From Macrostomum hystrix (lineage: Eukaryota; Animalia; Platyhelminthes): a stretch of 64,000 bases of DNA. The translations under genes were made by a program, and so were the position numbers. Below the pieces are notes generated by a model, which worked only from the letters and a program-made list of their open reading frames with translations, was not told where the DNA came from and did not search any database. Numbering within the stretch: the first letter of the stretch is position 1; each line of letters begins with the position of its first letter. The stretch spans positions 1,178,001 to 1,242,000 of the forward strand of contig CATNEN010000015.1 of NCBI GenBank assembly GCA_950097015.1, written 5' to 3'. Below are positions 4,674 through 64,000 of the stretch, piece by piece.

Positions 4674-4738
4674 TCGTGATGGGAGTTCGTATTCGTGATG
4701 GGAGTTCGTATTCGTGATGGGAGTTCGTATTCGTGATG
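4674..4738. repeat. Short 19-bp tandem repeat (GGGAGTTCGTATTCGTGAT x~3.5)
   Basis: Directly visible between the 29-bp array and the first TPR exon. Confidence 0.85.
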
Positions 4739-4760
4739 AGGGTATTTTGTCTGTAATCAG

Positions 4761-40700: not shown

Positions 40701-41767
40701 TATTGCGGCAGCATCGGCTGAAGTGATTCAGTTTGCCGCAGTTGTTGCACTTCTTGCCGTGCGCGGGACATTGGGCTTTGCCATCATGGCTGCGGCCGCA
40801 TCGCTGGCAGGATCCTCCGGCTTGCTGCCCTGGCTTCTTCTTGGACGGAGCGCCATGGTGACCTCGGGGTCTGGCCTCCTGCACAGCCTGGACATTTCCT
40901 GAAGAGCCGGCTGCTGCCATCGCCTTGCTGCCTGCCGCTGCCTCCTCGATAGTCGTCGCGATCACGATGGCTTGGTCCAGTGTCAGCCTGGCGGCGTCCT
41001 CAGTCAGCAGGCGCTCACGAATCCGGCTGCTGCTGGTTTTCTGGGCCAGCTGGTCGCGGATCATTTCGTCAGCCATTGCTCCGTAGTTGCAGGTGGCTGA
41101 CAGCTCGCGTAGTGCTGCGACAAACGTGACTGCGTCCTCTCCGGGCAGCTGATGTCGCTCCCGGAATCGGTGACGCGCCAACATCACGTTTGGCCGGTCG
41201 CCAAACACAGTCGTCAGCATGTCGCGGGTTTGCCAGAAGGTGTGGCCGTCGACAATCGCGTTGCGTGCCCTGGCAATCCGCTGCCCTTCGAAACCGAGCA
41301 GGTGCAGCAGCATGTTGCGGCTCCTCGTTGCCAGTCGCGTAGCTTCCTCTGTTGGAGCTTCGCCCTCTGCCGGCCGGTCAGTCCAGATCTGCGCCGCTTG
41401 GCAATAGATATCGAAAGCGTCTAGCCATCGATTCCATGGAACTGCTGGAGGTCCGCTTGCCGGCAGGTACGGTGTCGGTGGGCTAACGTTGAGGGCCATC
41501 CTCGTCGCCAGTTGTTATGTAGTGAACGAAGGGAACAACGGATTTGTTGGCAGATTCCAAATTGAGCAGTTATCCTTTTGTGATAGCTTTGTGTCCGTAT
41601 ATTTATAGGTAGCTGATATGTTAAATCGAAAGTTCTAGAAAACACGGACTATAGAAGGTTCTAGAATATTCTGGCCACAGAAGGTTCTAGAAACTACTAG
41701 CTTCCTCACTGCACTACTCATAGTGGCAGTATGCGTAAATTAGCATTCAGTCAGTCAATACACAACA
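37761..41767 (-). mobile_element. Ty3/Gypsy (Mag-like) LTR retrotransposon, 4007 bp. LTRs 37761-38015 and 41513-41767, 5-bp TSD GGTGT
   Basis: 255-bp LTRs appear identical by eye, TG..CA ends, PBS TGGCGACGAGG, PPT AGAGGGGGAAGA, TSD at 37756-37760 and 41768-41772. Confidence 0.96.
38044..41499 (-). CDS. Gag-Pol polyprotein (1151 aa): Gag with two zinc knuckles, protease, RT, RNase H, integrase zinc finger and C-terminal domain; integrase DDE core missing
   Basis: CQRCGRSH..CPAHGKKCNNCGKLNHFSRCC; VDCGAKVSLL; FSKIDLKAGY, VPFGLASAP, ILDD; SDASAESLG, ELRTDHQAL; AHSGHPG...CGAC then directly AQRIQERQQR...GDWVRVR. Confidence 0.92.
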   Translation of the reverse strand: MALNVSPPTPYLPASGPPAVPWNRWLDAFDIYCQAAQIWTDRPAEGEAPTEEATRLATRSRNMLLHLLGFEGQRIARARNAIVDGHTFWQTRDMLTTVFGDRPNVMLARHRFRERHQLPGEDAVTFVAALRELSATCNYGAMADEMIRDQLAQKTSSSRIRERLLTEDAARLTLDQAIVIATTIEEAAAGSKAMAAAGSSGNVQAVQEARPRGHHGAPSKKKPGQQAGGSCQRCGRSHDGKAQCPAHGKKCNNCGKLNHFSRCCRNKTMQVSAEETIYAVHGNNEVRADLQLGSIRKTVTLMVDCGAKVSLLNEATARSLGDIRLRTSSMRLRAYGGKLIALAGIATVPVKHHSRELQHDFYVTRSGENLIGRDLMEKLGFRVQLQLPAEIGAEIASVDIEREFPTVFSGSIGLCKGAVHKPRINAAVPPVQQPLRRLPLAKQQQVGEELDRLEAMGIIERVNSSPWISNLVVANKKDGNIRVCIDVREPNKSLVIDRHPMPQLDEISAKIKAAGGSVFSKIDLKAGYMQMKLHESSRDLTAFITHQGLYRYCRVPFGLASAPAAFQRMLDDLVSDLQGVEHILDDFIVFGATEAEHDSRLRALLKRLEDAGLTANKDKCQLRRTEIEFFGFIFSANGMRPSESQTKAFSELRPPTNRKELQAFLGSANYLMRFVPNFAEVTAPLRPLLKSDAVFEWSTECEKAFETLKAAICSPPVLAHFDPGAETIVTSDASAESLGAQLSQVQDGIERPIAFAARALTETEKRYAANEREALASLWAMEKWHYYLYGRHFELRTDHQALRQLLLGPSGTGHRPLRIHRWCDRFQQYDFHVRYLPGNRNFVADMLSRWSCGSDMNIIQLPDTAMPPVRVVTPQQLAIATAEDAVLRQVIQHVTSGNWSSSSDSELQPYFKVREHLSVWQDGACLALQERAVIPLQLRRELLEAAHSGHPGVVRTKQQLREFAWWPKMDADVETFVRDCGACETAEKNFKLRPALLSPSKDNAVAHTEMAQRIQERQQRTAAYTDQRRRARPPALRAGDWVRVRRPIRRGKLGTRLSAPLRIVKTMGAACRLTDGSTWNQQALVPTSMRLSPETPVPDELDPLIDIQGQHTVPDDGGGDPLPAPDPAQGLATPPVRRSGRPRRPVQCYGF

Positions 41768-44700
41768 GGTGTAGCATGAAATATTGACGGAAGCATGACT
41801 TATCGAAGGTGTAGCATGAACTATTGACGGAAGCATGAACTATCGAGGGTTTAGCATGAAACATTGACGGAAGCATGACTTATCGAGGGTGTAGCATGAA
41901 ATATTGACGGAAGCATGACTTATCGAGGGTGTAGCATGAAATATTGACGGAAGCATGAACTATCGAGGGTGTAGCATGAAATATTGACGGAAGCATGACT
42001 TATCGAGGGTTTAGCATGAACTATTGACGGAAGCATGACTTATCGAAGGTGTAGCATGAAATATTGACGGAAGCATGACTTATCGAAGGTGTAGCATGAA
42101 CTATTGACGGAAGCATGACTTATCGAAGGTGTAGCATGAACTATTGACGGAAGCATGACTTATCGAAGGTGTAGCATGAACTATTGACGGAAGCATGACT
42201 TATCGAAGGTGTAGCATGAACTATTGACGGAAGCATGACTTATCGAGGGTGTAGCATGAAATATTGACGGAAGCATGACTTATCGAGGGTGTAGCATGAA
42301 CTATTGACGGAAGCATGACTTATCGAGGGTGTAGCATGAAACATTGACGGAAGCATGACTTATCGAGGGTGTAGCATGAAACATTGACGGAAGCATGACT
42401 TATCGAGGGTGTAGCATGAAACATTGACGGAAGCATGACTTATCGAGGGTGTAGCATGAAACATTGACGGAAGCATGACTTATCGAGGGTGTAGCATGAA
42501 ACATTGACGGAAGCATGACTTATCGAGGGTGTAGCATGAAACATTGACGGAAGCATGACTTATCGAGGGTGTAGCATGAAACATCGACGGAAGCATGACT
42601 TATCGAGGGTGTAGCATGAAATATTGACGGAAGCATGACTTATCGAAGGTGTAGCATGAACTATTGACGGAAGCATGACTTATCGAAGGTGTAGCATGAA
42701 CTATTGACGGAAGCATGACTTATCGAGGGTGTAGCATGAAATATTGACGGAAGCATGAACTATCGAGGGTGTAGCATGAAATATTGACGGAAGCATGACT
42801 TATCGAGGGTGTAGCATGAAATATTGACGGAAGCATGAACTATCGAGGGTGTAGCATGAAATATTGACGGAAGCATGACTTATCGAGGGTTTAGCATGAA
42901 CTATTGACGGAAGCATGACTTATCGAAGGTGTAGCATGAAATATTGACGGAAGCATGACTTATCGAAGGTGTAGCATGAACTATTGACGGAAGCATGACT
43001 TATCGAAGGTGTAGCATGAACTATTGACGGAAGCATGACTTATCGAAGGTGTAGCATGAACTATTGACGGAAGCATGACTTATCGAAGGTGTAGCATGAA
43101 CTATTGACGGAAGCATGACTTATCGAGGGTGTAGCATGAAATATTGACGGAAGCATGACTTATCGAGGGTGTAGCATGAACTATTGACGGAAGCATGACT
43201 TATCGAGGGTGTAGCATGAAACATTGACGGAAGCATGACTTATCGAGGGTGTAGCATGAAACATTGACGGAAGCATGACTTATCGAGGGTGTAGCATGAA
43301 CTATTGACGGAAGCATGACTTATCGAGGGTGTAGCATGAAACATTGACGGAAGCATGACTTATCGAGGGTGTAGCATGAAACATTGACGGAAGCATGACT
43401 TATCGAGGGTGTAGCATGAAACATTGACGGAAGCATGACTTATCGAGGGTGTAGCATGAAACATCGACGGAAGCATGACTTATCGAGGGTGTAGCATGAA
43501 ATATTGACGGAAGCATGACTTATCGGAGGTGTAGCATGAAACATTGACGGAAGCATGAACTATCGAGGGTGTAGCATGAAACATTGACGGAAGCATGAAC
43601 TATCGAGGGTGTAGCATGAAATATTGACGGAAGCATGACTTATCGAAGGTGTAGCATGAAATATTGACGGAAGCATGAACTATCGAGGGTGTAGCATGAA
43701 ACATTGACGGAAGCATGACTTATCGAGGGTGTAGCATGAAATATTGACGGAAGCATGACTTATCGAAGGTGTAGCATGAACTATTGACGGAAGCATGAAC
43801 TATCGAGGGTTTAGCATGAAACATTGACGGAAGCATGACTTATCGAGGGTGTAGCATGAAATATTGACGGAAGCATGACTTATCGAGGGTGTAGCATGAA
43901 ACATTGACGGAAGCATGACTTATCGAAGGTGTAGCATGAACTATTGACGGAAGCATGACTTATCGAGGGTGTAGCATGAAATATTGACGGAAGCATGACT
44001 TATCGAAGGTGTAGCATGAACTATTGACGGAAGCATGACTTATCGAAGGTGTAGCATGAACTATTGACGGAAGCATGACTTATCGAGGGTGTAGCATGAA
44101 ATATTGACGGAAGCATGAACTATTGAGGGTGTAGCATGAAATATTGACGGAAGCATGACTTATCGAGGGTGTAGCATGAACTATTGACGGAAGCATGAAC
44201 TATCGAGGGTGTAGCATGAAATATTGACGGAAGCATGACTTATCGAGGGTTTAGCATGAACTATTGACGGAAGCATGACTTATCGAGGGTGTAGCATGAA
44301 ATATTGACGGAAGCATGACTTATCGAAGGTGTAGCATGAACTATTGACGGAAGCATGACTTATCGAAGGTGTAGCATGAACTATTGACGGAAGCATGACT
44401 TATCGAGGGTGTAGCATGAAATATTGACGGAAGCATGAACTATCGAGGGTGTAGCATGAACTATTGACGGAAGCAAGAACTATCGAGGGTTTAGCATGAA
44501 ACATTGACGGAAGCATGAACTATCGAGAGGGTAGCATGAAATATTGACGGAAGCATGAACTATCGAGAGGGCAGCATGTGTTTTCAATGGGGTTGCATAA
44601 TTAATTTCGGGTGTAGCATAAATTATTGACCGGAAGGATAAATTTTTCGAGTGAACTTCAATAAAGTGTATTATTCCGGGAGCTTCGGTAAATATTGAGA

Positions 44701-47361
44701 GTAGCATGATTGTTGCAAGGTGCAGGAGCTCAATAATAGTAATAGCAATGACAGCACGGCGAGGCGAAGTGGACAACGAGAAGATAAGGCGAGATAACAA
44801 GAACTAGAACCGGACAGGACAGGACAAGCACGAGAACCAGAACGAGAACCAGGACAGACTCAGAACCAGAACCAGAACCAGTGGGGCGCGAGCGGGCCTA
44901 AAGCCCTTAGTTAAATAAGCTTAGTAAACTGCAGAACAGGGCGATCGATAACTCTAGAAACTGGCCTTAGCCAATGAGCGTGTAAGTACACTGGTCTGGG
45001 AAGACGACAATTTAAACATTAGCAAAACCAAGCTGTGGCGGCGCGATGTGCACCAACGCCTACTAACAGTAACACTCTAAGAATTACAGCTTAACCATAC
45101 GAACTGAGAAATGGATGAAAACCAGATGACATCAGTAAAACGGCTCTAGTTAGTACACACGTAAATTAGCTATGTAAATTAATACGTAAAGTAAATTGCT
45201 AGGGGCGCTCTCAACAAGTGACAACGTCACAGTGTGTTCTTCTTCCTCAAAAGGGAGTTTTGGTTGCTAGAAAAAAGTACTTGAAAATTTTTTTTAAGTA
45301 AAACTGATCATCTTTAACACGTATTGTTATAATTATCACTTAATTTTCATTTAAAAGTAGTAGAAACACTTTGCTACTAAACTTTTATGAGGCATACTTC
45401 ATTGGATAGATGATTTGTAAGCACTAGCGCTATATGCATTGGCCTGTTTATTGATACTTAAAATATACTTAAGTGGGAACATATTATGATGTCAAAAATG
45501 GGGAAGTACGACTTAAATAGAGAACATTAATAAACACAAAAAATCTTAATGGAGGGTCTGCACCTAAAGTTTAAACAGAAACTGGGATATAAAAGACATT
45601 TTGATCATGAAAAAGGAACAGGAGATCAAGTAGCACACTGATCTACTACTGAGATCAGTAGTACTATTGATTTACTAATTGGGATTTAATTAGTAAATAT
45701 TAAAATTAAAAGGACAAGTGGCATTGTTGCTTCCAATTGAAGAATTCTTTCTACGAAGCCTGGAATCTTCCTGATATTTCCGAGCATGCCTGATAAGACA
45801 GGCAAATATATTGTTATAGAACAGCGCTGAAGAGTTTGCGTGTTAATCAGACACACGAAACTCCCACTTCTAGACAATGGGGAACAATTGCCTAGGAATT
45901 TATAAAAGTCACGTGACACTTACTGCAATTGCTTCTTCTTCCTTAAGTAGTTCGTAGTCTTCTGGGTCCTTGTAATCCGGTAGTTCTTCTTCTTCTTATT
46001 CTGGTCGACCGTGAGGTTTCGAGTCTGTGTTTCTTGAGTCTTGGTAGTCTTGTCTTCTTTTGTCTTCCTGGCAGCTGCTTGAGTTTGTCTGTTGGCCAAT
46101 AAATGACGAGAGCGAATCAGATTACTTGACGGTTTCCTCGAGCTCGGAATTCACAATAGAAACGTGCGCCCTAGTGAACAATTGAAATCTCTCGTGTATA
46201 TCTCTAATAGGTCCTCCTGAAGGGCGTCTTCTTCGTTACCTCCGAAAGATAACGGATAACTCAAATCAAATCAATCAATAATCCTCTAGGAATGTATCCT
46301 AGGAAACAAGGAGGCCTTTCTCAAAAGTATCGACGATATGTGGCTCTCGTAAACTTAATTCAATTCAACAAAGACCGCTAGCGATAAATAACTCTGTCTA
46401 GTAAAGCGCTTACCACTTGTCTTTCCCTCAGAGATGAGTCCTCTTCTTCGTAGGGTGTTTTGAAGTCCGGTGGACCTCTCCGAGTCTGAATTTTTAGCTC
46501 GGATTTTCGCTTGTATTTATAGTAAAATTTTGGGGAAAAACCGGTTCTACTACCGGGTGTTTACATTGGGCATACATGTTTGCACAGTGAGGTCAGACTT
46601 GTTTGATCAGCTGCGTTTTGGGGGGTTTTCAGGTGAACATTACCATATTTGGAATATTGTGTAAATACAGGTGCAGAAACCGATGAGTCATGTTTGCTTC
46701 AAGTAAATACAGCTGTCGAGAACCAGTTCTCCGATTTCATGTCACATGACTTGCTTCAAAAATAGCGCATGACTCATTCCTAAAAATAGATTAAACATTA
46801 TAGCTAAGGTTTCCTTGTGACATTACTTTAAGTAGCGCGTTAAGTAAAAACATATTTTACAACTCTCTACAATATCTCCCTTTTTTACGAAAAAATTCGT
46901 CCCGAATTTATTGTTGACAATTAAAATTTTGGCATAAAAATTTAGGAGAATATACTTATATGTACGTATTTGTTGAAACAGTTGTGTGGTAGAATTTTAT
47001 AGATTTACAAAAACATAGTGAAACAGTGGATAATTCGATTTAAAACTTGTACCTAAAGCGTGAGAGTGAATACCATCACCGAGCAGTAGCAATAGTTACC
47101 AGCTACGAACGTATTAGTTAGTGGTAATTGTAGACAAAATTGTAATTAAGAGGCAATAGTGAATGTAAGTAGAAGAAAAGTGTTTGGATTTTTGTTCACC
47201 CATAGATCATGTTGTTTAGGTGTGTTTGGTGTTGTCGCCTTATTTTTTCCACCAGCTTGCTTATGGGCCAGAAAAGTTTTTGCAGTGGTGTGTAAGTAGT
47301 TTCTTCGGTCCGTTCCATTAGCATGAGGAAGGTGTCGAACGCCGTTGGTTCTCCTGGACTT

Positions 47362-47814
47362 TCAGCAATATTGTGGGCGAGCAGTAAGAGCCTTTGACGA
47401 TATGATTTTTAGACGCCAAGTTATTGGCCACGATTTTATGTTAATCGTTAAGTCGTTTATGCTGGCCTCCTCGCAGTTAGTTTCGTCTAGTAGGAGATCG
47501 AGGTGTATGGGCGTCATGTTGGTGATCGTTTTAGTATTGTCCAACATCTTCTCTAAACAGTCTGGACAGGAAGCGATGTTTCGTCGTGCCATTGATTGTA
47601 AGCAGCTAAAACAACTCCAATGTCGATTTTCGCACAATCGTATGTTGGGTTGTTCGTTGCATAGGACGCACCATACTCGGCTCCTGCGACACAGCGGACA
47701 TGTAGGTAGTGGGCCCTGGCTTGTGCAGTTTAGACAGACTTTATGCCCCCATTCGCATACTGGAACCAGATCTAGGCGTTCGTCGAGGCAGATGGGTCAC
47801 AACTCTCGATTCAT
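47362..47814 (-). pseudogene. Accessory double-RING protein 2, with in-frame TGA at 47799-47797 replacing the first Cys
   Basis: My translation: MNREL*PICLDERLDLVPVCEWGHKVCLNC..TCPLCRR..WCVLC..RLCENRHWSCFSC..ASCPDC, paralogous to 48122-48487. Confidence 0.82.
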
Positions 47815-47827
47815 CTGTTGAAATGTT

Positions 47828-48097
47828 TTAATAATATTCTGATTCAGAGTTATTATACTGGTATGTTTCTTGAGATGGTAGTATATATGATAGATCCTCG
47901 TTTCGCAAAATTAGTGTGGGAAGAATTGTACAGAAAATGGGACAGGGATGAAGATTCATGTCATCGACAAGATTAAACAGTTTTTGTGCAATATCATGTA
48001 TGGACAATTGTCTAAGCTCAGGGCCGTATTGCAATGAGTATCGTACGCTCGTACAATGTTTTTACGCGTTTTGTGAGCAATTCGTGGTATAGGCCAT
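47828..48097 (-). pseudogene. Small accessory ORF of unknown function with one internal TAA (48064-48062)
   Basis: ATG 48097 MAYTTNCSQNA*KHCTSVRYSLQYGPELRQ... stays in frame with the 68-aa ORF in the track. Confidence 0.45.
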
Positions 48098-48121
48098 GCT
48101 TTTAGAAGTTGAATTATCTTA

Positions 48122-48487
48122 TTAGAGGAAAAAAAGAGTATAGGTTAATGGATGAAGTTGGCAACCATAATTTGGTTTAATACGCGCAAGTTTGTTATAA
48201 ATCATGAATAGTGGGGTATTATTGCAAACAGGACATTGGAAAATGGCTCGATAGACAAACTTCTTCATGCATTGCGGACACATAAAATGTTGGTTTTGAC
48301 AGTATTGTACAGTTCGCCATGAGTTACATATCATACATTGGCGGAGATTTCCACGGCACAGAGGACAGTTTTTTAATGGTTTTTTGTAGTGTGCGAGGCT
48401 TAAGCAAGAACCGCAAACATGGTGTTTATTGACACATATACATGGTAGTTTACATGAGAATTCTGTAAGACAGACAGGACAGTCCAT
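48122..48487 (-). CDS. Accessory double-RING (C3HC4-like x2) protein 1
   Basis: CPVC..C.NKHHVCGSC..CPLC followed by CMIC..CQNQHFMCPQC..CPVC. Confidence 0.85.
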   Translation of the reverse strand: MDCPVCLTEFSCKLPCICVNKHHVCGSCLSLAHYKKPLKNCPLCRGNLRQCMICNSWRTVQYCQNQHFMCPQCMKKFVYRAIFQCPVCNNTPLFMIYNKLARIKPNYGCQLHPLTYTLFFL

Positions 48488-48645
48488 GGTAGTGTTCGCG
48501 AAAATTGTGTGGGCGTTTGCAGAGAGCAGAGGTTTAGTCGCCTTTTACGACAAGCTTGAGAAGCTGTAGTGTTATTCTTAATCCCGGTCACTACACGGGG
48601 AACAATAAACGAGTAATTTAACGAGGGCGTAGGTTATACGTATGA

Positions 48646-50328
48646 TTATTTGGTGGTGTGTTTTGTGGTTTGTGTCTCGGCATGTGCTGTTGCAATGTGC
48701 GTGTTTGTTGTTTTTGTGTGGTCTGGATTCTGTAACGTTGGAAGGAATGTAGTGTCGTTAGTGATGCGTTTTAAACGTTGAATGTGAACGTAGAACTGAG
48801 GTTGATGTGGATCCTGGATATTTGCAAGGCGTGCTGTTGTTGCGGATATCAGTCCTGTTACACGGAAAGGTCCTTTGTATTTGAAAGCATGCTTGTGCGT
48901 ATGCTGTGCCGGGTAGTGTAGGTAGACGATATCTCCTACTTGTAAGGTAGAAGCATGATTACTTGTTGTAGGTACGGTAGATTGGTTGTCGAGATTATGT
49001 TTTGCAATTTGCCATGCTAGGTGTAATTGAGAAGTGAACTTTTGTAGCGTCGTCGGCGTGTCAACATATTGAGATGGCAGTAATTTCTGGACTAATAGAT
49101 TCGGTGGTTGAAAGTCTCGAGAGAACATCAGAAAGAATGGTGTGTTCTCTGTTGAGCGATGAACTGCGCTGTTGTAGGCCATTGTCACGGATTGTATGTA
49201 AATAATCCAATCTTCAGGTTGTTTGTAAACAAAGTGTGTCAGCATTTCATGTAGATTTCTGTGAAATCTTTCGACGAGGTTTGCTTTTGGATTATATGTC
49301 GAAGTGAATATTTGTTGAATATTCAGTAGTTTGGCGGCCTGTTGAAATAACTGCGATGTGAACTGTGTACCATTGTCAGATGTTAGCGTCTTAGGAGTTC
49401 CGAATTTGCAGATAATTTCATTATAGAAGGCCATTGCAACTGTTGTCGCTGTGATGTCAGGTATCGGAATGGCAACGGCGAATTTCGAAAAAACATCCAA
49501 GGCTGTAAGAATGTAGTTGTAGTCGATAGAGTGTTGTCGAGCCGGTGGTAGTGGTCCGGTAATGTCAATTGACACTGTGTCCCATGTAGTTGTCTTCGGC
49601 ACTGATTGGAATTCAGGTTTTTGTCGTCTTCCGATTTTTGTTGAAGCACATGAGTGACATTGTGTGCAGTACTTGCGAATGTCTAAATTCATTGTTAACC
49701 AAAAATAGAACTGGGCGACTCTCTGGATTGTTTTCTTGGCGGATAAGTGTCCTGCTAATGGACTATCATGGAGTTCGTGTAGGATCGCTGAACGGAATGT
49801 GTATGGTAGGTACAGTCGCGGAATATTGTTGTACACCCAGTAGAGTGCGAGTTCTCTGAAAACTAGACTATTTTTGTGTTTTCGTAAGAATTGTTTTTCG
49901 ATTTTTGTAAGTTCATTTTCCGTTTCTTCTGTATCTTCTTGTATGGCTTTGTAAAAGGAATCGTCTTGTTGTGCTTTCAACAAGTCTTTTATGGTTGGAA
50001 TTGGATGAACTGCATTGATCTCGTATGTTCTGGACAGTGCATCAGCGGCTTTATTCATTGGCCCTGGTTTGTAAACCAGGTGAAAGTTGTAGTCCTGTAT
50101 TTTGAGGACCATTCGGATAAGTCTATTGTTCGTCTGTCCTTTTGTTTTAACAACGTGAGTCAGCGGTGCATGAACTGTGCGAATGATAGTTGGCAGTGGT
50201 GATCCATAGATGTAGTAATGGAATTGTCGAAGAGCAAACAGAACAGCTAGTAGTTCTCGTTCAGTGGATGACCATTTCGTTTCGTTTGGTCTATCGTTTG
50301 GTCTATTCGTTTGGTCTGATGTAAGCAA
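48646..50328 (-). CDS. Pol, RNase H C-part plus integrase (frameshifted from RT)
   Basis: TERELLAV, ADALSR, HDSPLAGH..CTQC, VSIDITGP, SDNGTQF, LVERFHR, GPF. The RNase H TDH motif reads TVH. Confidence 0.93.
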   Translation of the reverse strand: MLTSDQTNRPNDRPNETKWSSTERELLAVLFALRQFHYYIYGSPLPTIIRTVHAPLTHVVKTKGQTNNRLIRMVLKIQDYNFHLVYKPGPMNKAADALSRTYEINAVHPIPTIKDLLKAQQDDSFYKAIQEDTEETENELTKIEKQFLRKHKNSLVFRELALYWVYNNIPRLYLPYTFRSAILHELHDSPLAGHLSAKKTIQRVAQFYFWLTMNLDIRKYCTQCHSCASTKIGRRQKPEFQSVPKTTTWDTVSIDITGPLPPARQHSIDYNYILTALDVFSKFAVAIPIPDITATTVAMAFYNEIICKFGTPKTLTSDNGTQFTSQLFQQAAKLLNIQQIFTSTYNPKANLVERFHRNLHEMLTHFVYKQPEDWIIYIQSVTMAYNSAVHRSTENTPFFLMFSRDFQPPNLLVQKLLPSQYVDTPTTLQKFTSQLHLAWQIAKHNLDNQSTVPTTSNHASTLQVGDIVYLHYPAQHTHKHAFKYKGPFRVTGLISATTARLANIQDPHQPQFYVHIQRLKRITNDTTFLPTLQNPDHTKTTNTHIATAHAETQTTKHTTK

Positions 50329-51850
50329 TCGGTTTTTCTTTCTTTGGTTCCATTTCCTGAAGTAGTACGGCTCCTAATCCGCTTCCTGATGCGTCTGTTT
50401 CTATGATAAAAGGTTTGTGGAAGTTCGGGTGTTTGAGAAGAGCATCACTAGTTAGTTGTTGTTTGATTCTATCGAAACTTTCCTGTTGTTCCGCTTTCCA
50501 GTTGTCTTCTTTCCACTTTGGAATTTTTAGTAGTTCGTACAATGGTTTAGCCGTTTGTGCAAAGTTAGGTAGGAATTTTCGGAAATATTGTGCTAGTCCA
50601 AGGAATGACTGCAGTTTGGTAATTGACGTAGGTTTCGGGAACTTCTTGACCTTGTCGACGTTATTTGGGTCAGGTGATATGCCTCGTGATGAGACGTGAT
50701 GTCCAAGATATCGGACCGAATCTCTGCAGAATTTACATTTTGTTGGTTGCAGTTTTAGACCTTGTTGTCGGAGTAAGAAGAGAGCTTGTTCCATGACTTT
50801 TACTAGTTGTTCAAAGTTATTTCCAAAGGCAAGAATATCATCAACATAGTGAAGCAGATTTGTACATCCGGCTAGCATATAGGCTGTAAGACGGCTCATT
50901 GTTGCTGGTGAGTTGGAGATTCCCATTGGACTTCTCTGATACGCGAAAACTTCTCCTTTGTAAGTTTTGAAGGCAGTGTATTGTTTTGATTCTTCTTCAA
51001 GTTCGATTTGCCAGAATCCATGTCGTAGGTCAAATACGGTGAAGAGTGTCGCCGTATTGAGTCGTGCTAGCAGTTCTGAGATTTTTGGTAGACTTTGTTG
51101 ATCGGTGGGAATGTACTTATTTAGGACTCGGAAATCACAGACGAGTCGTCTTTCGTTTGTTTCTTTCTTTTCGACAAGAAGGCAAGGTGAAGAATAAGCT
51201 GAGACGGTACGTTTTATGATTCCTGCTTTAAGCATTTTTTCTATGATTTCATCGAAGTGTTGCTGTAGGTGTTTAGCGACTGGATATGGTTTACATTGGA
51301 TTGGTTCTTGATGAGGTAGCAGTTCAATTTTTTGCTTGATATCTCGAGCACATCCGATGTCGTAATCGTGATGACAAAAGACGTCGTTATACTTCCACAA
51401 TAGATCTTTAACTTGTGTTTTTTGTCCTTCAGTGATTGGACTTTGAGAAAGATCAATTTGTTGTAGGAATTTTTGTTTAGACATTTTTGTTGTTGTCTCT
51501 GGTTGGATGAGCATTACCGAAGCTTGTGTGTTGAGATGTCCCATGCATGTTCCTGCATAGATTTTTACTGGATGTTGATTTGGATTTATAATTTGTACTG
51601 GGATAAGGACTAGAGCCGTTGGTATTAAAACTTCTTTTGTTGTGAGGATCTTCTTTCTTGGTTCAAATATCATAGCTTCTTCGACATCGTCATGATTGGC
51701 GAGGTATGCTTTAACCCAACATGTACTTTCCGGCTGTATGAAGACATCTTGTTTAATATGTACTTTTGGTTGAAGGTGAACTTGGCTGACTAAAGGATGT
51801 TCCACATTGTCCAGTTTGAATGTTTGTTTGTTGAAATCAAATGTTAATGG
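50303..51850 (-). CDS. Pol, dUTPase-like spacer plus reverse transcriptase plus RNase H N-part
   Basis: SAYSSPCLLVEKK, RLVCDFRVLN, FDLRHGFWQI, PMGISNSP, YVDD, ETDASGSGLGAVLLQ. The frame extends upstream as PLTFDFNKQTFKL. Confidence 0.94.
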   Translation of the reverse strand, partial: PLTFDFNKQTFKLDNVEHPLVSQVHLQPKVHIKQDVFIQPESTCWVKAYLANHDDVEEAMIFEPRKKILTTKEVLIPTALVLIPVQIINPNQHPVKIYAGTCMGHLNTQASVMLIQPETTTKMSKQKFLQQIDLSQSPITEGQKTQVKDLLWKYNDVFCHHDYDIGCARDIKQKIELLPHQEPIQCKPYPVAKHLQQHFDEIIEKMLKAGIIKRTVSAYSSPCLLVEKKETNERRLVCDFRVLNKYIPTDQQSLPKISELLARLNTATLFTVFDLRHGFWQIELEEESKQYTAFKTYKGEVFAYQRSPMGISNSPATMSRLTAYMLAGCTNLLHYVDDILAFGNNFEQLVKVMEQALFLLRQQGLKLQPTKCKFCRDSVRYLGHHVSSRGISPDPNNVDKVKKFPKPTSITKLQSFLGLAQYFRKFLPNFAQTAKPLYELLKIPKWKEDNWKAEQQESFDRIKQQLTSDALLKHPNFHKPFIIETDASGSGLGAVLLQEMEPKKEKPIAYIRPNE

Positions 51851-53640
51851 TATAGATTCATTTGCCGAAATGTGTCGATTCCAATAATAACATCTTGGCT
51901 TGGAAGATGGTCAATAACAAATGCTTGTACCAGAAGTTGCTTGTTTGCAAGTTTAAGTGATATATTCACTTGTCCTAGGATATTAAGTGCATGTCCTCCG
52001 GCTCCGGCGACAGCGATTGAAGAAGGTCGCATATGAAGTTGCAATTTGTCGTAGAGTCTTTTTGTGATGACTGTGATTGAACTTCCTGAGTCGAGAAGTG
52101 CTTTACTGGGCATGTTGTTTATAAATACTTGAGCCATCGCTCTACCCATATTGGCTTGCAAGGTGCAAATGTAATTTGCTGGCCATTTTGGATCCGTTGG
52201 TAGAGGAGGAGATTTCGGCGGAGGTCTCACTGTTCTGATTTCAATTTTTGGGTAAATATTTGATCGTTCTGGTTCTGGTGCTGTTGGCAATAATTGTTTT
52301 CCTTGATCTTGTAGTATAGTTTCTTCAATTTTTTCGTTGGGTGTAGAAGTTTCTTGTTGTTTGTCAATTTGGAAAATCCGTTGTTTTGCTGGATAGGCTC
52401 GTGCTACACATCGTACTACTGTGATAAAGATCATTAGTGCAAGGTGAATCCATACAATGCATGCACTGGAGAAGATGAATCCCTGATAGTAACTTCCTTT
52501 TCCTTGGAGTAAATCGAGAAAGCTATTCGACCAAAAGGATCCTATTGCGTTATGTATGATGAATCCTGTCGAAAAGGATTGTTCTTTGTCCTGCTGGTTG
52601 TGTTGGGTAAAGAGCTTGTTCATCATCTGTCGTTGGGCAATAAAAACTTGAAGAAAATCATTAATTGTCCATCCTGGTGTGATTTCGTCAAGTTTGATGT
52701 CACCAAATGGTTTATAGGTGGTCTTATTTATCTTGAGCTGTAGGTCCGATAGTTCGTATGTTTCGTCGATAATAGCTTGCATACCAGTGATGTTTGTAAT
52801 GTGCCCAGTTGTTGAGACCTTGTGTAGTTTATTATTAATGTTGAAATAGTTGGCTGCGTCAGTGCAGGGTCTCGGGATTGCAGTTCCAACAATTATATTG
52901 TGCACAGTATCTAGAAATCCTTGAATTCGTTTCCCATTGTAGTAAGCTTCGATTCGGGGTTTATCGTAGCACGTAGTTGATGTGTTTGATGGCAAGATAT
53001 TAAAATGATGCAGTGGCACACATTTGTAAATCAACAGATGGCCAGAGATGGGGATAGCTAAAGCATCTTGAATCCCTGTGATTTTTCTGAATGTAGACGT
53101 TGGATTGACATAATAGTTTTGTCGTGCATAGTTAAGTGCAGTTTCGTGCATTCTACAAGTCAGTTGGATCAGTGATTTGTGCAAGTAGTTTAGTTCTTTA
53201 TGTAGGTTATGTTCCATTGCTGCGAGTTTTGCCGCTAGTAGTCGTGCAGAAACCATTGATGGTCTTTGTAGTTCTCTCCTTTTCCGAGCTGTGTTGGTTC
53301 TTGTTGAATAAGTAGTACCATTGACCAGTCTCATAAAGGTATCCTCATCCATATCACGTAATTCGAGCGGTATCTCTTGTTCAGACACTAGAAGTTTTTT
53401 AGAGTTCTCCTTGCAGTTAATTTGGAGATACTTGGGTTTTTTCGGAAAAGTTAGGGCAAAATCCGACGTACTCGCAAGGAAGGTATTTGACAGTAGATTT
53501 CCTTTTATTGTATGGTACTTCTGGAATTTACAATCAATATTCGGTTCAACTTTCCATGCAACGAAGTATTGTCGTTGGTATCCTGTAATCTCATAGTATG
53601 GGCTGTGTCGATGTTCAATTTGCCATCTGTAATTTTGATG
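51844..53640 (-). CDS. Envelope C-terminal part, TM helix, PTAP tail and aspartic protease (frame open from ~53640)
   Basis: Upstream of the tracked ORF the frame reads HQNYRWQ..YFVAWKVEPNIDCKF..ALTF..INC; furin-like ARKRR; NPTSTFRKITG..ALAIPISGHLLIYKC..CYDKP..GFLD..II..PC; TM YQGFIFSSACIVWIHLALMIFITVV; protease ALLDSGSSITVI...VIIGIDTF. Confidence 0.85.
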   Translation of the reverse strand, partial: HQNYRWQIEHRHSPYYEITGYQRQYFVAWKVEPNIDCKFQKYHTIKGNLLSNTFLASTSDFALTFPKKPKYLQINCKENSKKLLVSEQEIPLELRDMDEDTFMRLVNGTTYSTRTNTARKRRELQRPSMVSARLLAAKLAAMEHNLHKELNYLHKSLIQLTCRMHETALNYARQNYYVNPTSTFRKITGIQDALAIPISGHLLIYKCVPLHHFNILPSNTSTTCYDKPRIEAYYNGKRIQGFLDTVHNIIVGTAIPRPCTDAANYFNINNKLHKVSTTGHITNITGMQAIIDETYELSDLQLKINKTTYKPFGDIKLDEITPGWTINDFLQVFIAQRQMMNKLFTQHNQQDKEQSFSTGFIIHNAIGSFWSNSFLDLLQGKGSYYQGFIFSSACIVWIHLALMIFITVVRCVARAYPAKQRIFQIDKQQETSTPNEKIEETILQDQGKQLLPTAPEPERSNIYPKIEIRTVRPPPKSPPLPTDPKWPANYICTLQANMGRAMAQVFINNMPSKALLDSGSSITVITKRLYDKLQLHMRPSSIAVAGAGGHALNILGQVNISLKLANKQLLVQAFVIDHLPSQDVIIGIDTFRQMNLYH

Positions 53641-56242
53641 ATGCTTCGTTCAAGAGTTTTGCTGTTTCGCAGAACCCTGTGTTGTACTTGCAATCTTCCA
53701 TTGATAATTGTAGAGATTCCATGTTTTCAAATGGATTGTGGTAAAACAAGACTTTCCGGATTAAGTAACTGTTTGTCGTGGTGTAACGTGGCCATATGTA
53801 TTCGTTCCAATGGACATATCTACCGCTCGCACTGTTCTTGGTCCTGAAGAGTTGAGAGTTTCCAATTTTTTCATCGGCATGAAGTTCTCCATCTTTAGAA
53901 AATAATGTTTGGTTCCACTGGAGGCATTCTTCTTGTGTGACAGGCAGTGCTGTTTGCCAGAATCGGATGCGATTCCATTGGATGTACCAAACCTTTTCTA
54001 GTTCATGTTTGTCTCGGAAGCAGATAATACCATATTGCCTATGTTTCTTTGTGTTTGCTTTGTAGACATCGATCGTTAATGGAATAGGTTTTGTTTGATT
54101 AGTTTTAAAGTAACTGCACTTGATTTCCGTTGGTATTTTGTAGATGACTGGTTGGATGTTGGCATCAGTAGGGCAAATCATGGGCACTGAAGATGGTACA
54201 ACTGTCGGGAGAAGTAACATCACGATGGCTGAAAACAACCATCTTATCAGTATGTGCCGTTTCTTTTTCTTCACTTTGGTTGGTGGTGTCGGTTTATTGG
54301 TGTTTATTGAGTATCGTTGGTCTTCTGTCTCTCCAATTGGTGGAGTAAGGCGCATAGAAAAGTGCCATGGGTTGTTGCATCCTGATGGTCTGGTTTGTTG
54401 GTTATACCAGGTTGGTTGTTTCATATCGAATGTTAATGGTGTATTGAGAGTTTGCAGTACGGTACTTGTAGTATCCGTTCTCATGTCGATCCACGTTGTT
54501 GGTTCATCATAGATATGATCGTCATCATTTTCCATCGACGTATTGTAGTCACTTTTAGTCTGAGAAGATCTATCGTGCTTCGAGTAGTATGATTCGGTAT
54601 CCACTGCTTTATCGTGTCCATTCTGTCCTTCAGATGAATTGACATGGGTTATGTTTTCGTATTCGGGATCAGGTTTGTACTTGGGTGTCGAAGGCGGTGT
54701 CTCTGTCAAGTCGATGTCATCGACTAAAATTTGTAGCATGCTGATGCTTTCTTCAGACGTGTTGTGTGAATTTTTCGCACTGTGGTCCTCATTATTCCTT
54801 TCTGTGGATGTGGACAATTTATCTATGCCTTCTTTGTTTTGCAGAATTTTTGAAAGATCACTCATCGTTGGAATTTTAAATAATCCTTTGATTTGTTGTT
54901 GTAATTGTTTTCGTTCAATGTGTTGACAGGTGTTGAAGGCAACACTTTCTCTTGGCGAGGGAATCGATAATTCTTCAAACAATGAACCCATTATGCAGCT
55001 GCTGTCGTTGCTTGTGTTGTCGTTCTGTATTTCCTGTGTTGACTCATTGTTGTAGTAAAAATTGTTTTTTTCTGTATCCTCTGTTTCCTTTTGTGGCATG
55101 GGCGGCTCTTTCGAATGGTCGCTTTCGATTATAGTAATATAGGCTGCACCCTCGTTGTCCAGATGAAGGTCATTGATTTCTTGCTCCTTTTGTTTCTCAA
55201 GTTCATCAAGAACATTGACGGAAAAGTCTGGCATAAGATCTTCAATCTTGAACTTTGGCTCAATAGCTTGAGTGTATTGTCGACGGACTTGCGTTGGTTG
55301 TCTTGGAGGTGGAGGATTTCTTTGTTGACGATAAGGTACGATGGCATTAGATGGTCTGCTATCTTGTTGTCGACTATTTGTCCAATTACGGTTTGAAGGC
55401 TGTCTTGGAGGATGAGTCCAATTGGTCTGTCTATTGTCATTGTATGAACGTGGGTTGCCACGTGATCTGCAGTCTCTAGCATAATGACCGATCCTTCCAC
55501 AGGTGTAACAAGTTGATGTGTGCAAGTATCTCTGTTGTGGTTGTGGATAGGAATATCTCTGCTGCTGTGGTACAATAGCAGAAGTTTGGTGTTGCTGCAT
55601 GAGTTTGCTTAATTGTTCTGCTAGTTGTGTCGTGTCACTATTATGAGTAGTCATAAGAGGTGCGCTAGCTTCCCATTGCATTCCACAACGGAGCAATTGT
55701 TCCTCTGTGTTAATAGTTTCTCTCAGCAGTCTATCTCGCAAAGTAGGCTGTGCGTTGTTAATCACATGAAGTATTAAGCTTTGTTCCCGGTCTTCAAGAC
55801 GTTGTCTTTCTCGGGCAGCTGATTCGGCAGGTCCTATAGGTTGAGCTCCTTGATCCAATGGTGGAGGCTGATGTAATGCTTTGACGATCTTACGTATGTC
55901 ATCAACAAAGGTGAGAAAACTCTCAGTGGGACTCATTTTTCGATTATGAAGTTTATGAAGGAGTACCGATCTGTTTGTTCCACATCTTGCGAATTGTGCT
56001 CTCAGTTGGGTAACTAGAGCTTGATAATCTTGTTGTACTGCAGCTGTCAATTTTCCATAGATTTCTCGGGCTGTTCCTTGTAACAGTGGAGGTAGGAGGA
56101 GTGCTTTCTCTGCATTCTGTAATCCATATTCGCGTGAGACCAAATCAAAGTGATCAATGAATGTGTTGAAATCTTTATCCATTGTATACGTTCCGACCGT
56201 TTCCTTAATGTCACGATGGACCTGATAGTTTCTTCGTGCCAT
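53615..56242 (-). CDS. Gag (capsid-like, CCHC knuckle) fused through a long spacer and internal signal sequence to the envelope N-terminal part
   Basis: ATG 56242 MARRNYQ; FIDHFDLV..LLLPPLLQGTAREIY; CYTCGRIGHYARDC; KKKKRHILIRWLFSAIVMLLLPTVVPS/SVPMICP; GIICF..WYIQW..PVTQEECLQW..DCKYNTGFCET. Confidence 0.88.
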   Translation of the reverse strand: MARRNYQVHRDIKETVGTYTMDKDFNTFIDHFDLVSREYGLQNAEKALLLPPLLQGTAREIYGKLTAAVQQDYQALVTQLRAQFARCGTNRSVLLHKLHNRKMSPTESFLTFVDDIRKIVKALHQPPPLDQGAQPIGPAESAARERQRLEDREQSLILHVINNAQPTLRDRLLRETINTEEQLLRCGMQWEASAPLMTTHNSDTTQLAEQLSKLMQQHQTSAIVPQQQRYSYPQPQQRYLHTSTCYTCGRIGHYARDCRSRGNPRSYNDNRQTNWTHPPRQPSNRNWTNSRQQDSRPSNAIVPYRQQRNPPPPRQPTQVRRQYTQAIEPKFKIEDLMPDFSVNVLDELEKQKEQEINDLHLDNEGAAYITIIESDHSKEPPMPQKETEDTEKNNFYYNNESTQEIQNDNTSNDSSCIMGSLFEELSIPSPRESVAFNTCQHIERKQLQQQIKGLFKIPTMSDLSKILQNKEGIDKLSTSTERNNEDHSAKNSHNTSEESISMLQILVDDIDLTETPPSTPKYKPDPEYENITHVNSSEGQNGHDKAVDTESYYSKHDRSSQTKSDYNTSMENDDDHIYDEPTTWIDMRTDTTSTVLQTLNTPLTFDMKQPTWYNQQTRPSGCNNPWHFSMRLTPPIGETEDQRYSINTNKPTPPTKVKKKKRHILIRWLFSAIVMLLLPTVVPSSVPMICPTDANIQPVIYKIPTEIKCSYFKTNQTKPIPLTIDVYKANTKKHRQYGIICFRDKHELEKVWYIQWNRIRFWQTALPVTQEECLQWNQTLFSKDGELHADEKIGNSQLFRTKNSASGRYVHWNEYIWPRYTTTNSYLIRKVLFYHNPFENMESLQLSMEDCKYNTGFCETAKLLNEASSKLQMAN

Positions 56243-57813
56243 ATTCGCAACTGGGAACGGAAATAATTCAAGTTCTGGATCGATGTTCAAGGGTTCGTCC
56301 AGATTGACTTCTCTGACAAGATTTAGTGTGAATAAAAAGTGTGTGTGTGTGTGCGTGTGCGTGTGTATCAGCAAATTGAAAATGGTTTACACAGAGGAAT
56401 TATTTACTCAGGACAAGGGAGAAAAATTTATACAAAGCAGGGAACGTGTGCCGCTTTTAACGCTGAAAAGGGGTTATTGAAATGTGAGCCGGTGAGTTCA
56501 GTCGCGCGATTCCCAGGTGTGCAAACAATAGAGCGAAGTGACGCGTGTGGCTTATGTGCAAACAATATCCGGTAGGGACAGCAAAATTTTTCAGAGGGAT
56601 GACGCAACAAAATTTTTATGAATTTGTGGATCAAAGGCAATAATGATGAGTTGCAAAAATTGTTTCTTTTTACTTTTTCGTTAAAACGATTCAAGAGTTG
56701 TAACGCAAAAAAATTTAGTATCTTGGCCTGGGCTTGATTGCAGGGCCTGGGCGAGATCACCAGTTGAAGAGTTTTGCGTGTTGATCAGACACACGAAACT
56801 CCCACTTCTAGACAATGGGGAACAATTGCCTAGGAATTTATAACAGTCACGTGACACTTACTGCAATTGCTTCTTCTTCCTTAAGTAGTTCGTAGTCTTC
56901 TGGGTCCTTGTAATCCGGTAGTTCTTCTTCTTCTTATTCTGGTCGACCGTGAGGTTTCGAGTCTGTGTTTCTTGAGTCTTGGTAGTCTTGTCTTCTTTTG
57001 TCTTCCTGGCAGCTGCTTGAGTTTGTCTGTTGGCCAATAAATGACGAGAGCGAATCAGATTACTTGACGGTTTCCTCGAGCTCGGAATTCACAATAGAAA
57101 CGTGCGCCCTAATGAACAATTGAAATCTCTCTTGTGTCTCTCTAATAGGTCCTCCTGAAGGGCGTCTTCTTCGTTACCTCCGAAAGATAACGGATAACTC
57201 AAATCAAATCAATCAATAATCCTCTAGGAATGTATCCTAGGAAACAAGGAGGCCTTTCTCAAATGTATCGACGATATGTGGCTCTCGTAAACTTAATTCA
57301 ATTCAACAAGGATCGCTAGCGATAAATAACTCTGTCTAGTAAAGCGCTTACCACTTGTCTTTCCCTCAGAGATGAGTCCTCTTCTTCGTAGGGTGTTTTG
57401 AAGTCCGGTGGACCTCTCCGAGTCTGAATTTTTAGCTCGGATTTTCGCTTGTATTTATAGTAAAATTTTGGGGAAAAACCGGTTCTACTACCGGGTGTTT
57501 ACATTGGGCATACATGTTTGCACAGTGAGGTCAGACTTGTTTGATCAGCTGCGTTTTGGGGGGTTTTCAGGTGAACATTACCATATTTGGAATATTGTGT
57601 AAATACAGGTGCAGAAACCGATGAGTCATGTTTGCTTCAAGTAAATACAGCTGTCGAGAACCAGTTCTCCGATTTCATGTCAGATGACTTGCTTCAAAAA
57701 TAGCGCATGACTCATTCCTAAAAATAGATTAAACATTATAGCTAAGGTTTCCTTGTGACATTACTTTAAGTAGCGCGTTAAGTAAAAACATATTTTACAA
57801 CTCTCTACAGCGC

Positions 57814-63997: not shown

Positions 63998-64000
63998 GCC

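What the first reader, a model, noticed from the sequence alone, without database searches (positions are those of the whole stretch)
47362..48487. Two paralogous double-RING accessory genes downstream of integrase
ORF 48487-48122 has two tandem C3HC4-like RINGs. A second, diverged double-RING gene (47814-47362) is hidden from the ORF track by a TGA at its first Cys codon. RING E3 ligases are used by DNA viruses to degrade host restriction factors, but I do not know them as standard LTR-retrotransposon cargo. They may be anti-defence or anti-silencing factors of a complex retrovirus-like element.
Basis: partly seen in the sequence, partly recalled or inferred. Interest (0 to 1): 0.86.

Follow-up and report, generated by a model that had tools for sequence, protein, structure and literature searches.

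The report
Double-RING genes in a retroelement
A 12-kb retrovirus-like element, whose closest relatives are in the flatworm Macrostomum lignano, carries two related genes after its integrase that look like ubiquitin-ligase (RING) proteins; related elements keep the same genes under selection, which I have not found described for such elements, but both genes are broken in this copy.

Summary
On the minus strand, between the integrase stop (48646) and the 3' LTR (46871) of a complete LTR element (45828-57809), lie two paralogous genes, each with two adjacent C3HC4 RING signatures. They are real cargo, not a one-off capture. A relative with 64% identical integrase has an intact 206-aa orthologue at the same place. 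Another contig shows that gene followed at once by a second intact double-RING gene. Macrostomum lignano has orthologues of both. All 16 metal-ligand columns are kept in 9 of 9 sequences. One orthologue pair gives dN/dS 0.08. Predicted folds and a family profile match RING E3 ligases, although Pfam scores stay below threshold.

Two corrections:
- In this copy both are broken: gene A by 2-3 frameshifts, gene B by one stop and 1-2 frameshifts. Gag-pol has three frame changes.

Ligase activity and an anti-defence role are inferred, not shown. I found no such cargo described for LTR elements in the paper library. I rate it a new variant of a known kind, interest about 0.6.

The parts
57810..57813 (.). 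Target-site duplication, copy next to the 5' LTR (4 bp)
   Evidence: The same 4 bases flank both LTRs.
56765..57809 (-). 5' LTR (1045 nt, TG...CA ends)
   Evidence: 98.9% identical to the 3' LTR: 10 mismatches and one 1-base gap. Termini.
56745..56762 (-). Primer-binding site, 2 nt after the 5' LTR; its complement ends in CCA
   Evidence: Read. The first 14 nt recur at the matching place in the M. lignano relative L002.
48646..56374 (-). gag / env-like glycoprotein / protease / RT / RNase H / integrase coding region. Broken: read in four long open frames, i.e. three frame changes.
   Evidence: Pfam: zf-CCHC, weak PF24664 fusion glycoprotein (26.2 bits, cut-off 27), aspartyl protease, RVT_1, RT_RNaseH, Integrase_H2C2, rve. 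Same order in M. lignano L002.
48530..48600 (-). Conserved non-coding block between the integrase stop and the start of gene A. It has an acceptor-like pyrimidine run plus AG, then two small hairpins.
   Evidence: 75 invariant columns among the window, L001 and L002. Three compensatory pairs. No Rfam match.
47831..48487 (-). Gene A (A-type double-RING accessory gene, about 219 codons). Broken in this copy: 2-3 frameshifts, no stop on the alignment path.
   Evidence: 46% identity (88/193) to the intact 206-aa P0001 over its residues 8-206. Orthologues are P0001 and the M. lignano L002 ORF, 49-56% identical in the RING part.
48224..48481 (-). Double RING domain of gene A (RING1 48356-48481, RING2 48224-48337)
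   Evidence: Ligand pattern. AlphaFold2 pLDDT 74-93 over residues 1-105. All Foldseek PDB hits are RING domains.
47199..47814 (-). Gene B (B-type double-RING accessory gene, about 205 codons; the 3' end is approximate). Broken: one in-frame stop and 1-2 frameshifts.
   Evidence: Outer bounds and counts. Closest to the two modules of the M. lignano protein P0005 (51-54% identity in the RING part).
47557..47799 (-). Double RING domain of gene B
   Evidence: tblastn against gene A, alignment A1, Pfam Sina_RING E 1.8e-5, below threshold.
46875..46886 (-). Polypurine tract, 3 nt before the 3' LTR
   Evidence: Read.
45828..46871 (-). 3' LTR (1044 nt)
45824..45827 (.). Target-site duplication, copy next to the 3' LTR

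Best explanation
The two genes are conserved accessory genes of an env-bearing, Ty3/mdg4(gypsy)-type LTR retroelement lineage. Its nearest relatives are in the flatworm Macrostomum lignano. Each gene encodes a protein of about 205-215 aa: two RING-HC zinc fingers back to back, then a fast-evolving, probably helical C-terminal domain with a conserved Trp-Pro motif. I propose that the protein is a self-contained RING E3 ubiquitin ligase. RING1 engages the E2: it keeps a hydrophobic residue before the second Cys, and an invariant Pro and 'linchpin' Arg around the last Cys pair. RING2 keeps all ligands and the Pro but not the Arg, and would pack against RING1 as a built-in dimer partner, as in dimeric RING ligases. 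The variable C-terminal domain would pick the substrate. The most likely substrates are host proteins that restrain the element, which would also explain why the gene has duplicated and diversified into at least five lineages. Shown: position inside the element, conservation in relatives, purifying selection, RING-like fold. Inferred: zinc binding, E2 binding, ligase activity, the division of labour between the RINGs, the substrate class, and expression from a subgenomic or trans-spliced mRNA using the conserved block upstream of gene A. In this particular copy both genes are pseudogenes, as is gag-pol.
For: The element is complete: LTRs 98.9% identical, TG..CA ends, 4-bp target duplication, primer-binding site and polypurine tract. 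The genes lie between integrase and the polypurine tract. In relatives: L001 has integrase (64% identical), then 120 nt, then the intact 206-aa P0001. L005 has the end of a P0001-like gene, a stop, then at once the ATG of the intact 208-aa P0007. M. lignano L002 has integrase followed by an A-type RING ORF in two tandem elements. M. lignano P0005 holds two B-type modules. The 16 ligand columns are kept in 9/9 sequences that are only 27-56% identical overall. P42, R45 and P86 (window gene A numbering) are invariant. dN/dS is 0.08 over 49 codons of the C-terminal domain (15 synonymous, 5 non-synonymous, binomial P 3.7e-6). Among the three A-type lineages pN is 0.30-0.39 against pS of at least 0.77. 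The family profile matches RINGs of solved E3 ligases: TRIM21 E 1.7e-5 for RING1, BRE1 E 1.6e-4 for RING2, also SIAH1 and TRIM5. The AlphaFold2 model of the window's own ORF has pLDDT 79.8 and pTM 0.66. Foldseek returns only RING domains, including a linked RNF4 RING dimer and the RING1B-BMI1 fusion over both RINGs, and Bre1/RNF168 at rmsd 2.0-2.3 A over 43-47 residues. The sense-strand base composition of both genes matches the rest of the element.
Against: No Pfam RING model reaches its gathering score for any family member (best 26.6 against 27; the window proteins score 18.6 and 25.2). Foldseek E-values are weak (none at or below 1e-3 against PDB). The first loop of RING2 has 8 residues, just under the classical 9-39. 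There is no evidence of zinc binding, E2 binding, activity, target or expression. Both genes are broken here. In the two tandem M. lignano copies the A-type open frame also ends after the RING part and no B-type RING gene follows, so copies persist without them. The family is tiny in the databases: six relatives among 1.84 billion representatives. The frameshifts could in part be assembly errors. The C-terminal domain has no recognisable relative and a low-confidence model.
Confidence: 0.5

Rival explanations
1. The proteins are zinc-binding RING scaffolds without ligase activity. They would act by binding partners, for instance as a small matrix-like or regulatory protein in particle assembly, budding or control of the element's own polymerase, in the manner of the arenavirus Z protein.
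For: A Z matrix protein RING is among the structural matches (7ckl_B, rmsd 2.0 A over 47 residues, E 0.067). The element has an env-like gene and so may bud. The M. lignano A-type ORF begins with a Met-Gly-x-x-x-Ser start that resembles a myristoylation signal. RING matches to curated models are below threshold.
Against: The Gly-2 start is not kept in the window gene or in P0001, P0003 or P0007. RING1 keeps the residues typical of E2-binding RINGs, including the invariant Arg after the last Cys. Most profile and fold matches are active E3 ligases.
Confidence: 0.2
2. The proteins are E3 ligases that act on the element's own proteins or on the host trafficking machinery, rather than on host defence factors. 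Examples would be ubiquitin-dependent budding, turnover of integrase or Gag, or copy-number self-control.
For: The RING evidence is the same as for the main explanation. The element encodes a membrane glycoprotein within its polyprotein, so it needs membrane trafficking. Nothing in the data points to a specific host target.
Against: A housekeeping role on conserved own proteins would not predict rapid divergence. dN is 1.6-2.2 times that of integrase. It would also not predict at least five diverged lineages with different second-position genes. These patterns fit changing host targets better, but the argument is indirect.
Confidence: 0.15
3. The genes are a one-off capture of a host RING gene, or a neutral passenger, without function for the element.
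For: L003 holds a relative (P0002) with no integrase upstream and with intron-like features. A cellular relative may therefore exist and could be the source, or a domesticated descendant. Both genes are broken in this copy.
Against: The same position after integrase is kept in elements whose integrases are only 64-70% identical and whose synonymous sites are saturated. The A/B duplication is shared with M. lignano. dN/dS is 0.08 and the ligands are invariant. The breaks are no more than the decay expected after insertion: one indel per kb of LTR alignment.
Confidence: 0.03

Closest known systems
RING-HC (C3HC4) domains of cellular E3 ubiquitin ligases (best matches TRIM21, SIAH1, BRE1, TRIM5, RING1B/BMI1, RNF4, UHRF1, RNF8)
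   Same: Eight metal ligands in the cross-brace order and spacing. Pro after the seventh ligand. In RING1, a hydrophobic residue before the second Cys and an Arg after the last Cys. The predicted beta-beta-alpha RING fold. Matches over both RINGs to linked or heterodimeric RING pairs.
   Different: Two RINGs only six residues apart in about 90 residues. There is no B-box, coiled coil, SIAH-type zinc finger or other known partner domain. All Pfam scores are below the gathering threshold. The C-terminal domain is unknown. The genes are encoded by a retroelement.
RING proteins encoded by large DNA viruses (from my own knowledge: herpesvirus ICP0-type, poxvirus p28-type and baculovirus RING proteins; no sequences fetched)
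   Same: A virus-borne RING protein as an accessory gene. The BFVD fold search returned RING proteins of giant viruses, fish, amphibian and mollusc herpesviruses, baculoviruses and iridoviruses (best E 5.6e-4).
   Different: Only the generic RING fold is shared, with no specific relationship. None of the top 50 viral matches is from a reverse-transcribing virus. Here the carrier is an LTR retroelement and the architecture is a tandem RING plus a novel domain.
Accessory genes of complex retroviruses that redirect host ubiquitin ligases (lentiviral Vif, Vpr/Vpx and Vpu; from my own knowledge)
   Same: Small genes outside gag-pol-env. They are fast evolving and, in the lentiviral case, act through ubiquitination of host restriction factors. 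This is what the window's genes would work like if the main explanation is right.
   Different: Those proteins have no RING and borrow host cullin-RING ligases. Here the RING module would be self-encoded. There is no sequence or fold relationship. The function here is untested.
Arenavirus Z protein (small RING matrix protein)
   Same: A small virus-encoded RING protein and a local fold match (7ckl_B).
   Different: Z has a single RING and a conserved myristoylated Gly-2 and late domains, which this family does not keep. Z belongs to an RNA virus.
Extra ORFs of LTR retrotransposons (env-like genes of errantiviruses and nematode or mosquito elements; additional ORFs of plant Ty3/gypsy elements; from my own knowledge)
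   Same: Extra coding capacity between pol and the 3' LTR, kept within a lineage.
   Different: I know of none that encodes RING fingers. Four searches aimed at this in the held paper library found none, and a paper on M. lignano LTR elements mentions neither RING nor env.

Membership tests
RING-HC (C3HC4) zinc finger | Eight Cys/His ligands in the order C-C-C-H-C-C-C-C with canonical spacing | tested here: met
   Both RINGs of both genes. Kept in 9/9 family sequences. The first loop of RING2 has 8 residues, one short of the classical range.
RING-HC (C3HC4) zinc finger | Significant match to curated RING profiles | tested here: inconclusive
   Pfam hits are all below the gathering score: zf-RING_2 18.6 against 27.3, Sina_RING 25.2 against 29.3, and zf-C3HC4_3 26.6 against 27 for P0002. 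The family profile does match solved RINGs (TRIM21 E 1.7e-5, BRE1 E 1.6e-4).
RING-HC (C3HC4) zinc finger | Cross-brace beta-beta-alpha fold | tested here: met
   AlphaFold2 pLDDT 74-93 over residues 1-105 of the window ORF. Foldseek PDB hits are RING (and one U-box) domains or RING-bearing E3 assemblies, probability 0.9-0.99, local rmsd 2.0-2.3 A, but E-values of 5e-3 or weaker. This is a prediction only.
Active RING E3 ligase | E2-contact residues: a hydrophobic residue before ligand 2, Pro after ligand 7, and a basic 'linchpin' after ligand 8 | tested here: met
   Met for RING1: Ile or Val in all members, and Pro and Arg invariant. For RING2 the Pro is invariant but the other two positions vary, so RING2 alone does not meet it.
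Active RING E3 ligase | Zinc binding, E2 binding and ubiquitin transfer | not testable with these tools
   No experimental data available.
RBR (RING-between-RING) ligases | RING1, IBR and RING2 in series, with a catalytic Cys in a non-canonical RING2 | tested here: not met
   There is no IBR: the linker is six residues. The second finger has a full C3HC4 pattern. There is no Pfam IBR hit. Parkin and RNF216 appear only as weak fold hits.
LTR retroelement of Ty3/mdg4 (gypsy) type (the carrier) | Paired LTRs with TG..CA ends, target-site duplication, primer-binding site, polypurine tract, and the order protease-RT-RNase H-integrase | tested here: met
   I made no phylogenetic placement in a named clade.
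Accessory gene of a complex retrovirus-like element | Lies within the LTRs, outside gag-pol-env, and is conserved in position among related elements under selection | tested here: met
Accessory gene of a complex retrovirus-like element | Expressed from its own (spliced or otherwise processed) mRNA | not testable with these tools
   Only a lead: a conserved acceptor-like, structured block upstream of gene A.

The most novel reading that the evidence does not exclude
A lineage of retrovirus-like elements in flatworms encodes its own diversifying family of tandem-RING E3 ubiquitin ligases. These mark host anti-element factors for destruction. This would be the first self-encoded RING ligase in a reverse-transcribing element, doing directly what lentiviral accessory proteins do by borrowing host ligases. 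Gene duplication and swapping of the second gene would be the trace of an arms race.
Probability: 0.3. Interest if true: 0.8.

Novelty: new variant of a known kind. Interest (0 to 1): 0.6.

Why it matters
Retroviruses and LTR elements are known to fight host control through small accessory proteins. Large DNA viruses are known to carry RING ligases. A reverse-transcribing element with its own RING ligase genes would link the two themes. The genes are conserved and duplicated, and they diverge faster than integrase. That would mean invertebrate retroelements can be 'complex' in the retroviral sense. It would also point to unknown host restriction factors in flatworms. The nearest relatives sit in Macrostomum lignano, a laboratory model with a genome and transcriptomes, so descriptive follow-up (expression, distribution, structure) is feasible at once. 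The same element also seems to carry a membrane glycoprotein inside its gag-pol frame, which adds to its interest.

Tried and rejected
- Word-indexed protein search with gene A's ORF: nothing. The same search with the family profile A2 found no members beyond those already known.
- NCBIfam: nothing relevant.
- PDB sequence search with the single ORF: only BRCA1 RING at E 0.04. The profile did better.
- The C-terminal domain has no Pfam or PDB relative.
- Rfam on 45800-48800: no match.
- The env-like part against PDB sequences: nothing.
- Look-up of the neighbouring 1151-aa pol ORF to learn the source genome: not on record. M. lignano is the nearest relative (integrase 67-70% identical), not a proven source.
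- A paper search for the run accessions gave an unrelated paper.
- dN/dS among the window, L001 and L002 is unusable because synonymous sites are saturated. The three P0003 contigs differ by 0-1 bases, so they have no power.
- Rejected ideas: RBR ligase (no IBR); a conserved myristoylation signal (only in the M. lignano ORF); one-off transduction (contradicted by the relatives); a second copy of the element in the window (none).
- Most hits below the top few match only residues 84-114 of the query, in several stretches each. I took them for unrelated zinc-finger arrays and did not use them.
- Left out on purpose: scans of the viral contig collection; fetching any named viral RING protein as a comparator; reading genes A or B through their breaks as joined proteins (only the pieces were searched, aligned and folded); any consensus of the family or of the element. 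Nothing in the window looked human.

Full report
**What is there**

The region belongs to a complete LTR element on the minus strand, 45828-57809 (11,982 bp).
- The two LTRs (56765-57809 and 45828-46871) differ by 10 mismatches and one single-base gap.
- They begin TG and end CA and are flanked by the same 4 bases.
- A primer-binding site whose complement ends in CCA lies 2 nt after the 5' LTR. A purine run lies 3 nt before the 3' LTR.
- In between, Pfam finds a Gag zinc knuckle, a near-threshold match to a viral fusion glycoprotein family (PF24664, 26.2 bits against a cut-off of 27), an aspartyl protease, reverse transcriptase, RNase H and an integrase with H2C2 and rve domains.
- The two genes of the finding lie after the integrase stop (48646) and before the purine run, so they are internal cargo of the element.

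**The observation**

The second gene starts at 47814, has one in-frame stop and has the same two ligand sets. The two are paralogues: 36.5% identity over 85 aa, E 1.5e-12, with all covered ligands aligned.

**Relatives**

The word-indexed search found nothing. The exhaustive HMMER scan of 1.84 billion representatives found a handful of true relatives: P0001 (206 aa, 52% identical, E 1.8e-27), P0002, P0003, P0005 and P0007. Most other hits match only residues 84-114, in several stretches each, and I set them aside.

P0005 is a UniRef entry of Macrostomum lignano named 'RING-type domain-containing protein'. The others come from short Logan contigs. The best integrase relative is also from M. lignano (67% identity), and the next best has only 38%.

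Context of the relatives:
- In L001, an integrase 64% identical to the window's is followed after 120 nt by the intact P0001.
- In L005, the last 49 codons of a P0001-like gene are followed directly by the start codon of the intact 208-aa P0007. L001 and L005 overlap at 87% identity.
- In M. lignano (L002), two elements in tandem each show env-like/protease, RT, integrase and an A-type RING ORF, in that order. The primer-binding site recurs after the shared LTR.

So the position after integrase and the two-gene layout are conserved in diverged elements.

**Gene family**

In the double-RING part the sequences fall into groups:
- A-type: window gene A, P0001 and the M. lignano L002 ORF, 49-56% identical.
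- B-type: window gene B and the two modules of M. lignano P0005, 51-54% identical.
- P0007, P0003 and P0002 each stand apart, at 27-40%.

The A/B duplication therefore predates the split between the window's element and the M. lignano elements. The second-position gene differs between lineages.

All 16 ligand columns are kept in every sequence. In RING1 the Pro after the seventh ligand and the Arg after the eighth are invariant. In RING2 only the Pro is.

**Selection**
- Between L001 and L005, the 49 shared codons of the C-terminal domain show 15 synonymous and 5 non-synonymous differences: dN 0.047, dS 0.59, ratio 0.08. The binomial P against neutrality is 3.7e-6.
- Among the three A-type lineages synonymous sites are saturated, with pN far below pS. 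The RING part changes 1.6-2.2 times faster in amino acids than integrase does.

**Fold**
- A profile of the family matches RINGs of solved E3 ligases: TRIM21 at E 1.7e-5 for RING1, BRE1 at E 1.6e-4 for RING2, and also SIAH1, TRIM5 and RING2.
- The AlphaFold2 model of the window's own ORF, with the family as its alignment, has mean pLDDT 79.8 and pTM 0.66. Its last 14 residues are below 50.
- The model of the intact P0001 is confident only over the RINGs. The C-terminal part is helical but of low confidence.
- The Foldseek PDB hits listed are RING (one U-box) domains or RING-bearing ligase complexes. A linked RNF4 RING dimer and the RING1B-BMI1 fusion align over both fingers. Single RINGs align at rmsd 2.0-2.3 A. 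No E-value is at or below 1e-3.
- Against predicted viral structures, only generic RINGs of large DNA viruses appear, and none is from a reverse-transcribing virus.
- Pfam scores are below threshold for all members. Membership of the RING class therefore rests on pattern, profile and predicted fold together.

**State of this copy**

Relatives are 206-214 aa: the double RING plus a C-terminal domain with a conserved Trp-Pro motif. Similar coding sequence for that domain is present in the window for both genes, but neither gene reads in one frame.

A frameshift-aware alignment, from which only scores, counts and outer bounds were printed, gives:
- Gene A: 2-3 frameshifts and no stop, with 88/193 identities to P0001, within 48487-47831.
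- Gene B: one stop and 1-2 frameshifts, within 47814 to about 47199.

The gag-to-integrase region is read in four long open frames, which makes three frame changes. Comparison with the M. lignano copy suggests that the intact form reads in one frame, so I count three frameshift breaks.

The LTR pair shows about one indel per kb. This load of breaks is therefore what decay after insertion would give, and it does not show that the genes were dead on arrival. Some indels could be assembly errors.

**Mechanism**

I commit to a self-contained RING E3 ligase:
- RING1 is the E2-binding finger.
- RING2 is its built-in dimer-like partner.
- The variable C-terminal domain selects the substrate.
- Host factors that restrain the element are the likeliest targets.

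Only the RING-like architecture, conservation and selection are shown. The rest is inference.

Rivals:
- A non-catalytic RING scaffold, as in the arenavirus Z protein.
- A ligase that acts on the element's own proteins or on trafficking.
- A passenger gene, which the relatives contradict.

**Comparison with what is known**

Virus-encoded RING proteins are known from large DNA viruses. Complex retroviruses use accessory proteins that borrow host ligases. LTR elements are known to carry extra ORFs. I know of no LTR element or retrovirus with RING genes. Four searches of the held paper library aimed at this found none. A recent paper on M. lignano LTR elements mentions neither RING nor env. I rate it a new variant of a known kind.

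- Judgement call. I made the look-ups of genomic and Logan contigs that carry relatives of the finding's own proteins under the leave to compare and describe the copies. If the bar is meant more widely, those are the calls concerned.
- Nothing in the window looked human.

Noticed in passing
window 48530-48600 (minus strand); L001 about 1345-1410; L002 about 4735-4805: A non-coding block between the integrase stop and gene A is far better conserved than the flanking coding DNA (75 invariant columns among three elements). It starts with a pyrimidine run ending in AG, like a 3' splice or trans-splice site. It then forms two small hairpins with three compensatory pairs. There is no Rfam match. It may be the signal for expressing the RING genes.
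   Followed up: partly
window about 52395-54253 (minus strand), inside the gag-pol coding region: An env-like membrane glycoprotein sits between Gag and the protease. It has a hydrophobic signal/anchor-like stretch, a Cys-rich ectodomain with a near-threshold Pfam match to PF24664 (fusion glycoprotein of Monjiviricetes, 26.2 bits against 27) and a second hydrophobic anchor just before the protease. The M. lignano relative L002 has the same order. Comparison of the two suggests a single gag-env-pol frame in the intact form, which would be an unusual polyprotein layout. There is no PDB sequence match.
   Followed up: partly
L003 (Logan SRR31252246, 1472 nt, GC 31%): The relative P0002 has no integrase upstream. 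An intron-like stretch (GT...AG with a pyrimidine run) ends right at its start codon, and the Trp-Pro C-terminal domain lies in another frame after an acceptor-like site. It may be a cellular, intron-bearing member of the family, either the source of the capture or a domesticated copy.
   Followed up: partly
L005 149-154; window about 47814-47831: In L005 the stop of the first RING gene is followed at once by the start of the second. In the window the two genes are about 14 nt apart. Such tight spacing hints at coupled translation or a shared mRNA.
   Followed up: no
L002 (M. lignano NIVC01002447.1, 180264-198213): Two related elements lie in tandem with a period of about 9.73 kb and share an LTR. 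Their A-type RING ORF begins Met-Gly-x-x-x-Ser after an upstream TTG, like a myristoylation signal. Only a short piece resembling the N-terminus of P0005 follows, with no B-type RING.
   Followed up: partly
window 42000-44700: A tandem satellite with a 40-nt unit, at least 61 register-shifted copies at 93-100% identity, about 1.1 kb from the element's 3' LTR.
   Followed up: no
window 38044-41499 (minus strand): An open 1151-aa Gag-protease-RT-RNase H-integrase ORF of a different, GC-rich (about 60%) Ty3/mdg4-type element. It is 25-29% identical to the element studied here. Its exact protein is not on record in the look-up collection.
   Followed up: partly
window 58259-58812 vs 62294-62846, and 58886-59165 vs 63723-64000: A segmental repeat right of the element (97.5% and 91% identity). 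It holds ORFs with Cys-rich motifs that I took by eye to be WSC-like, presumably host sequence. A further 77% match links 57807-58181 to 24405-24783.
   Followed up: no
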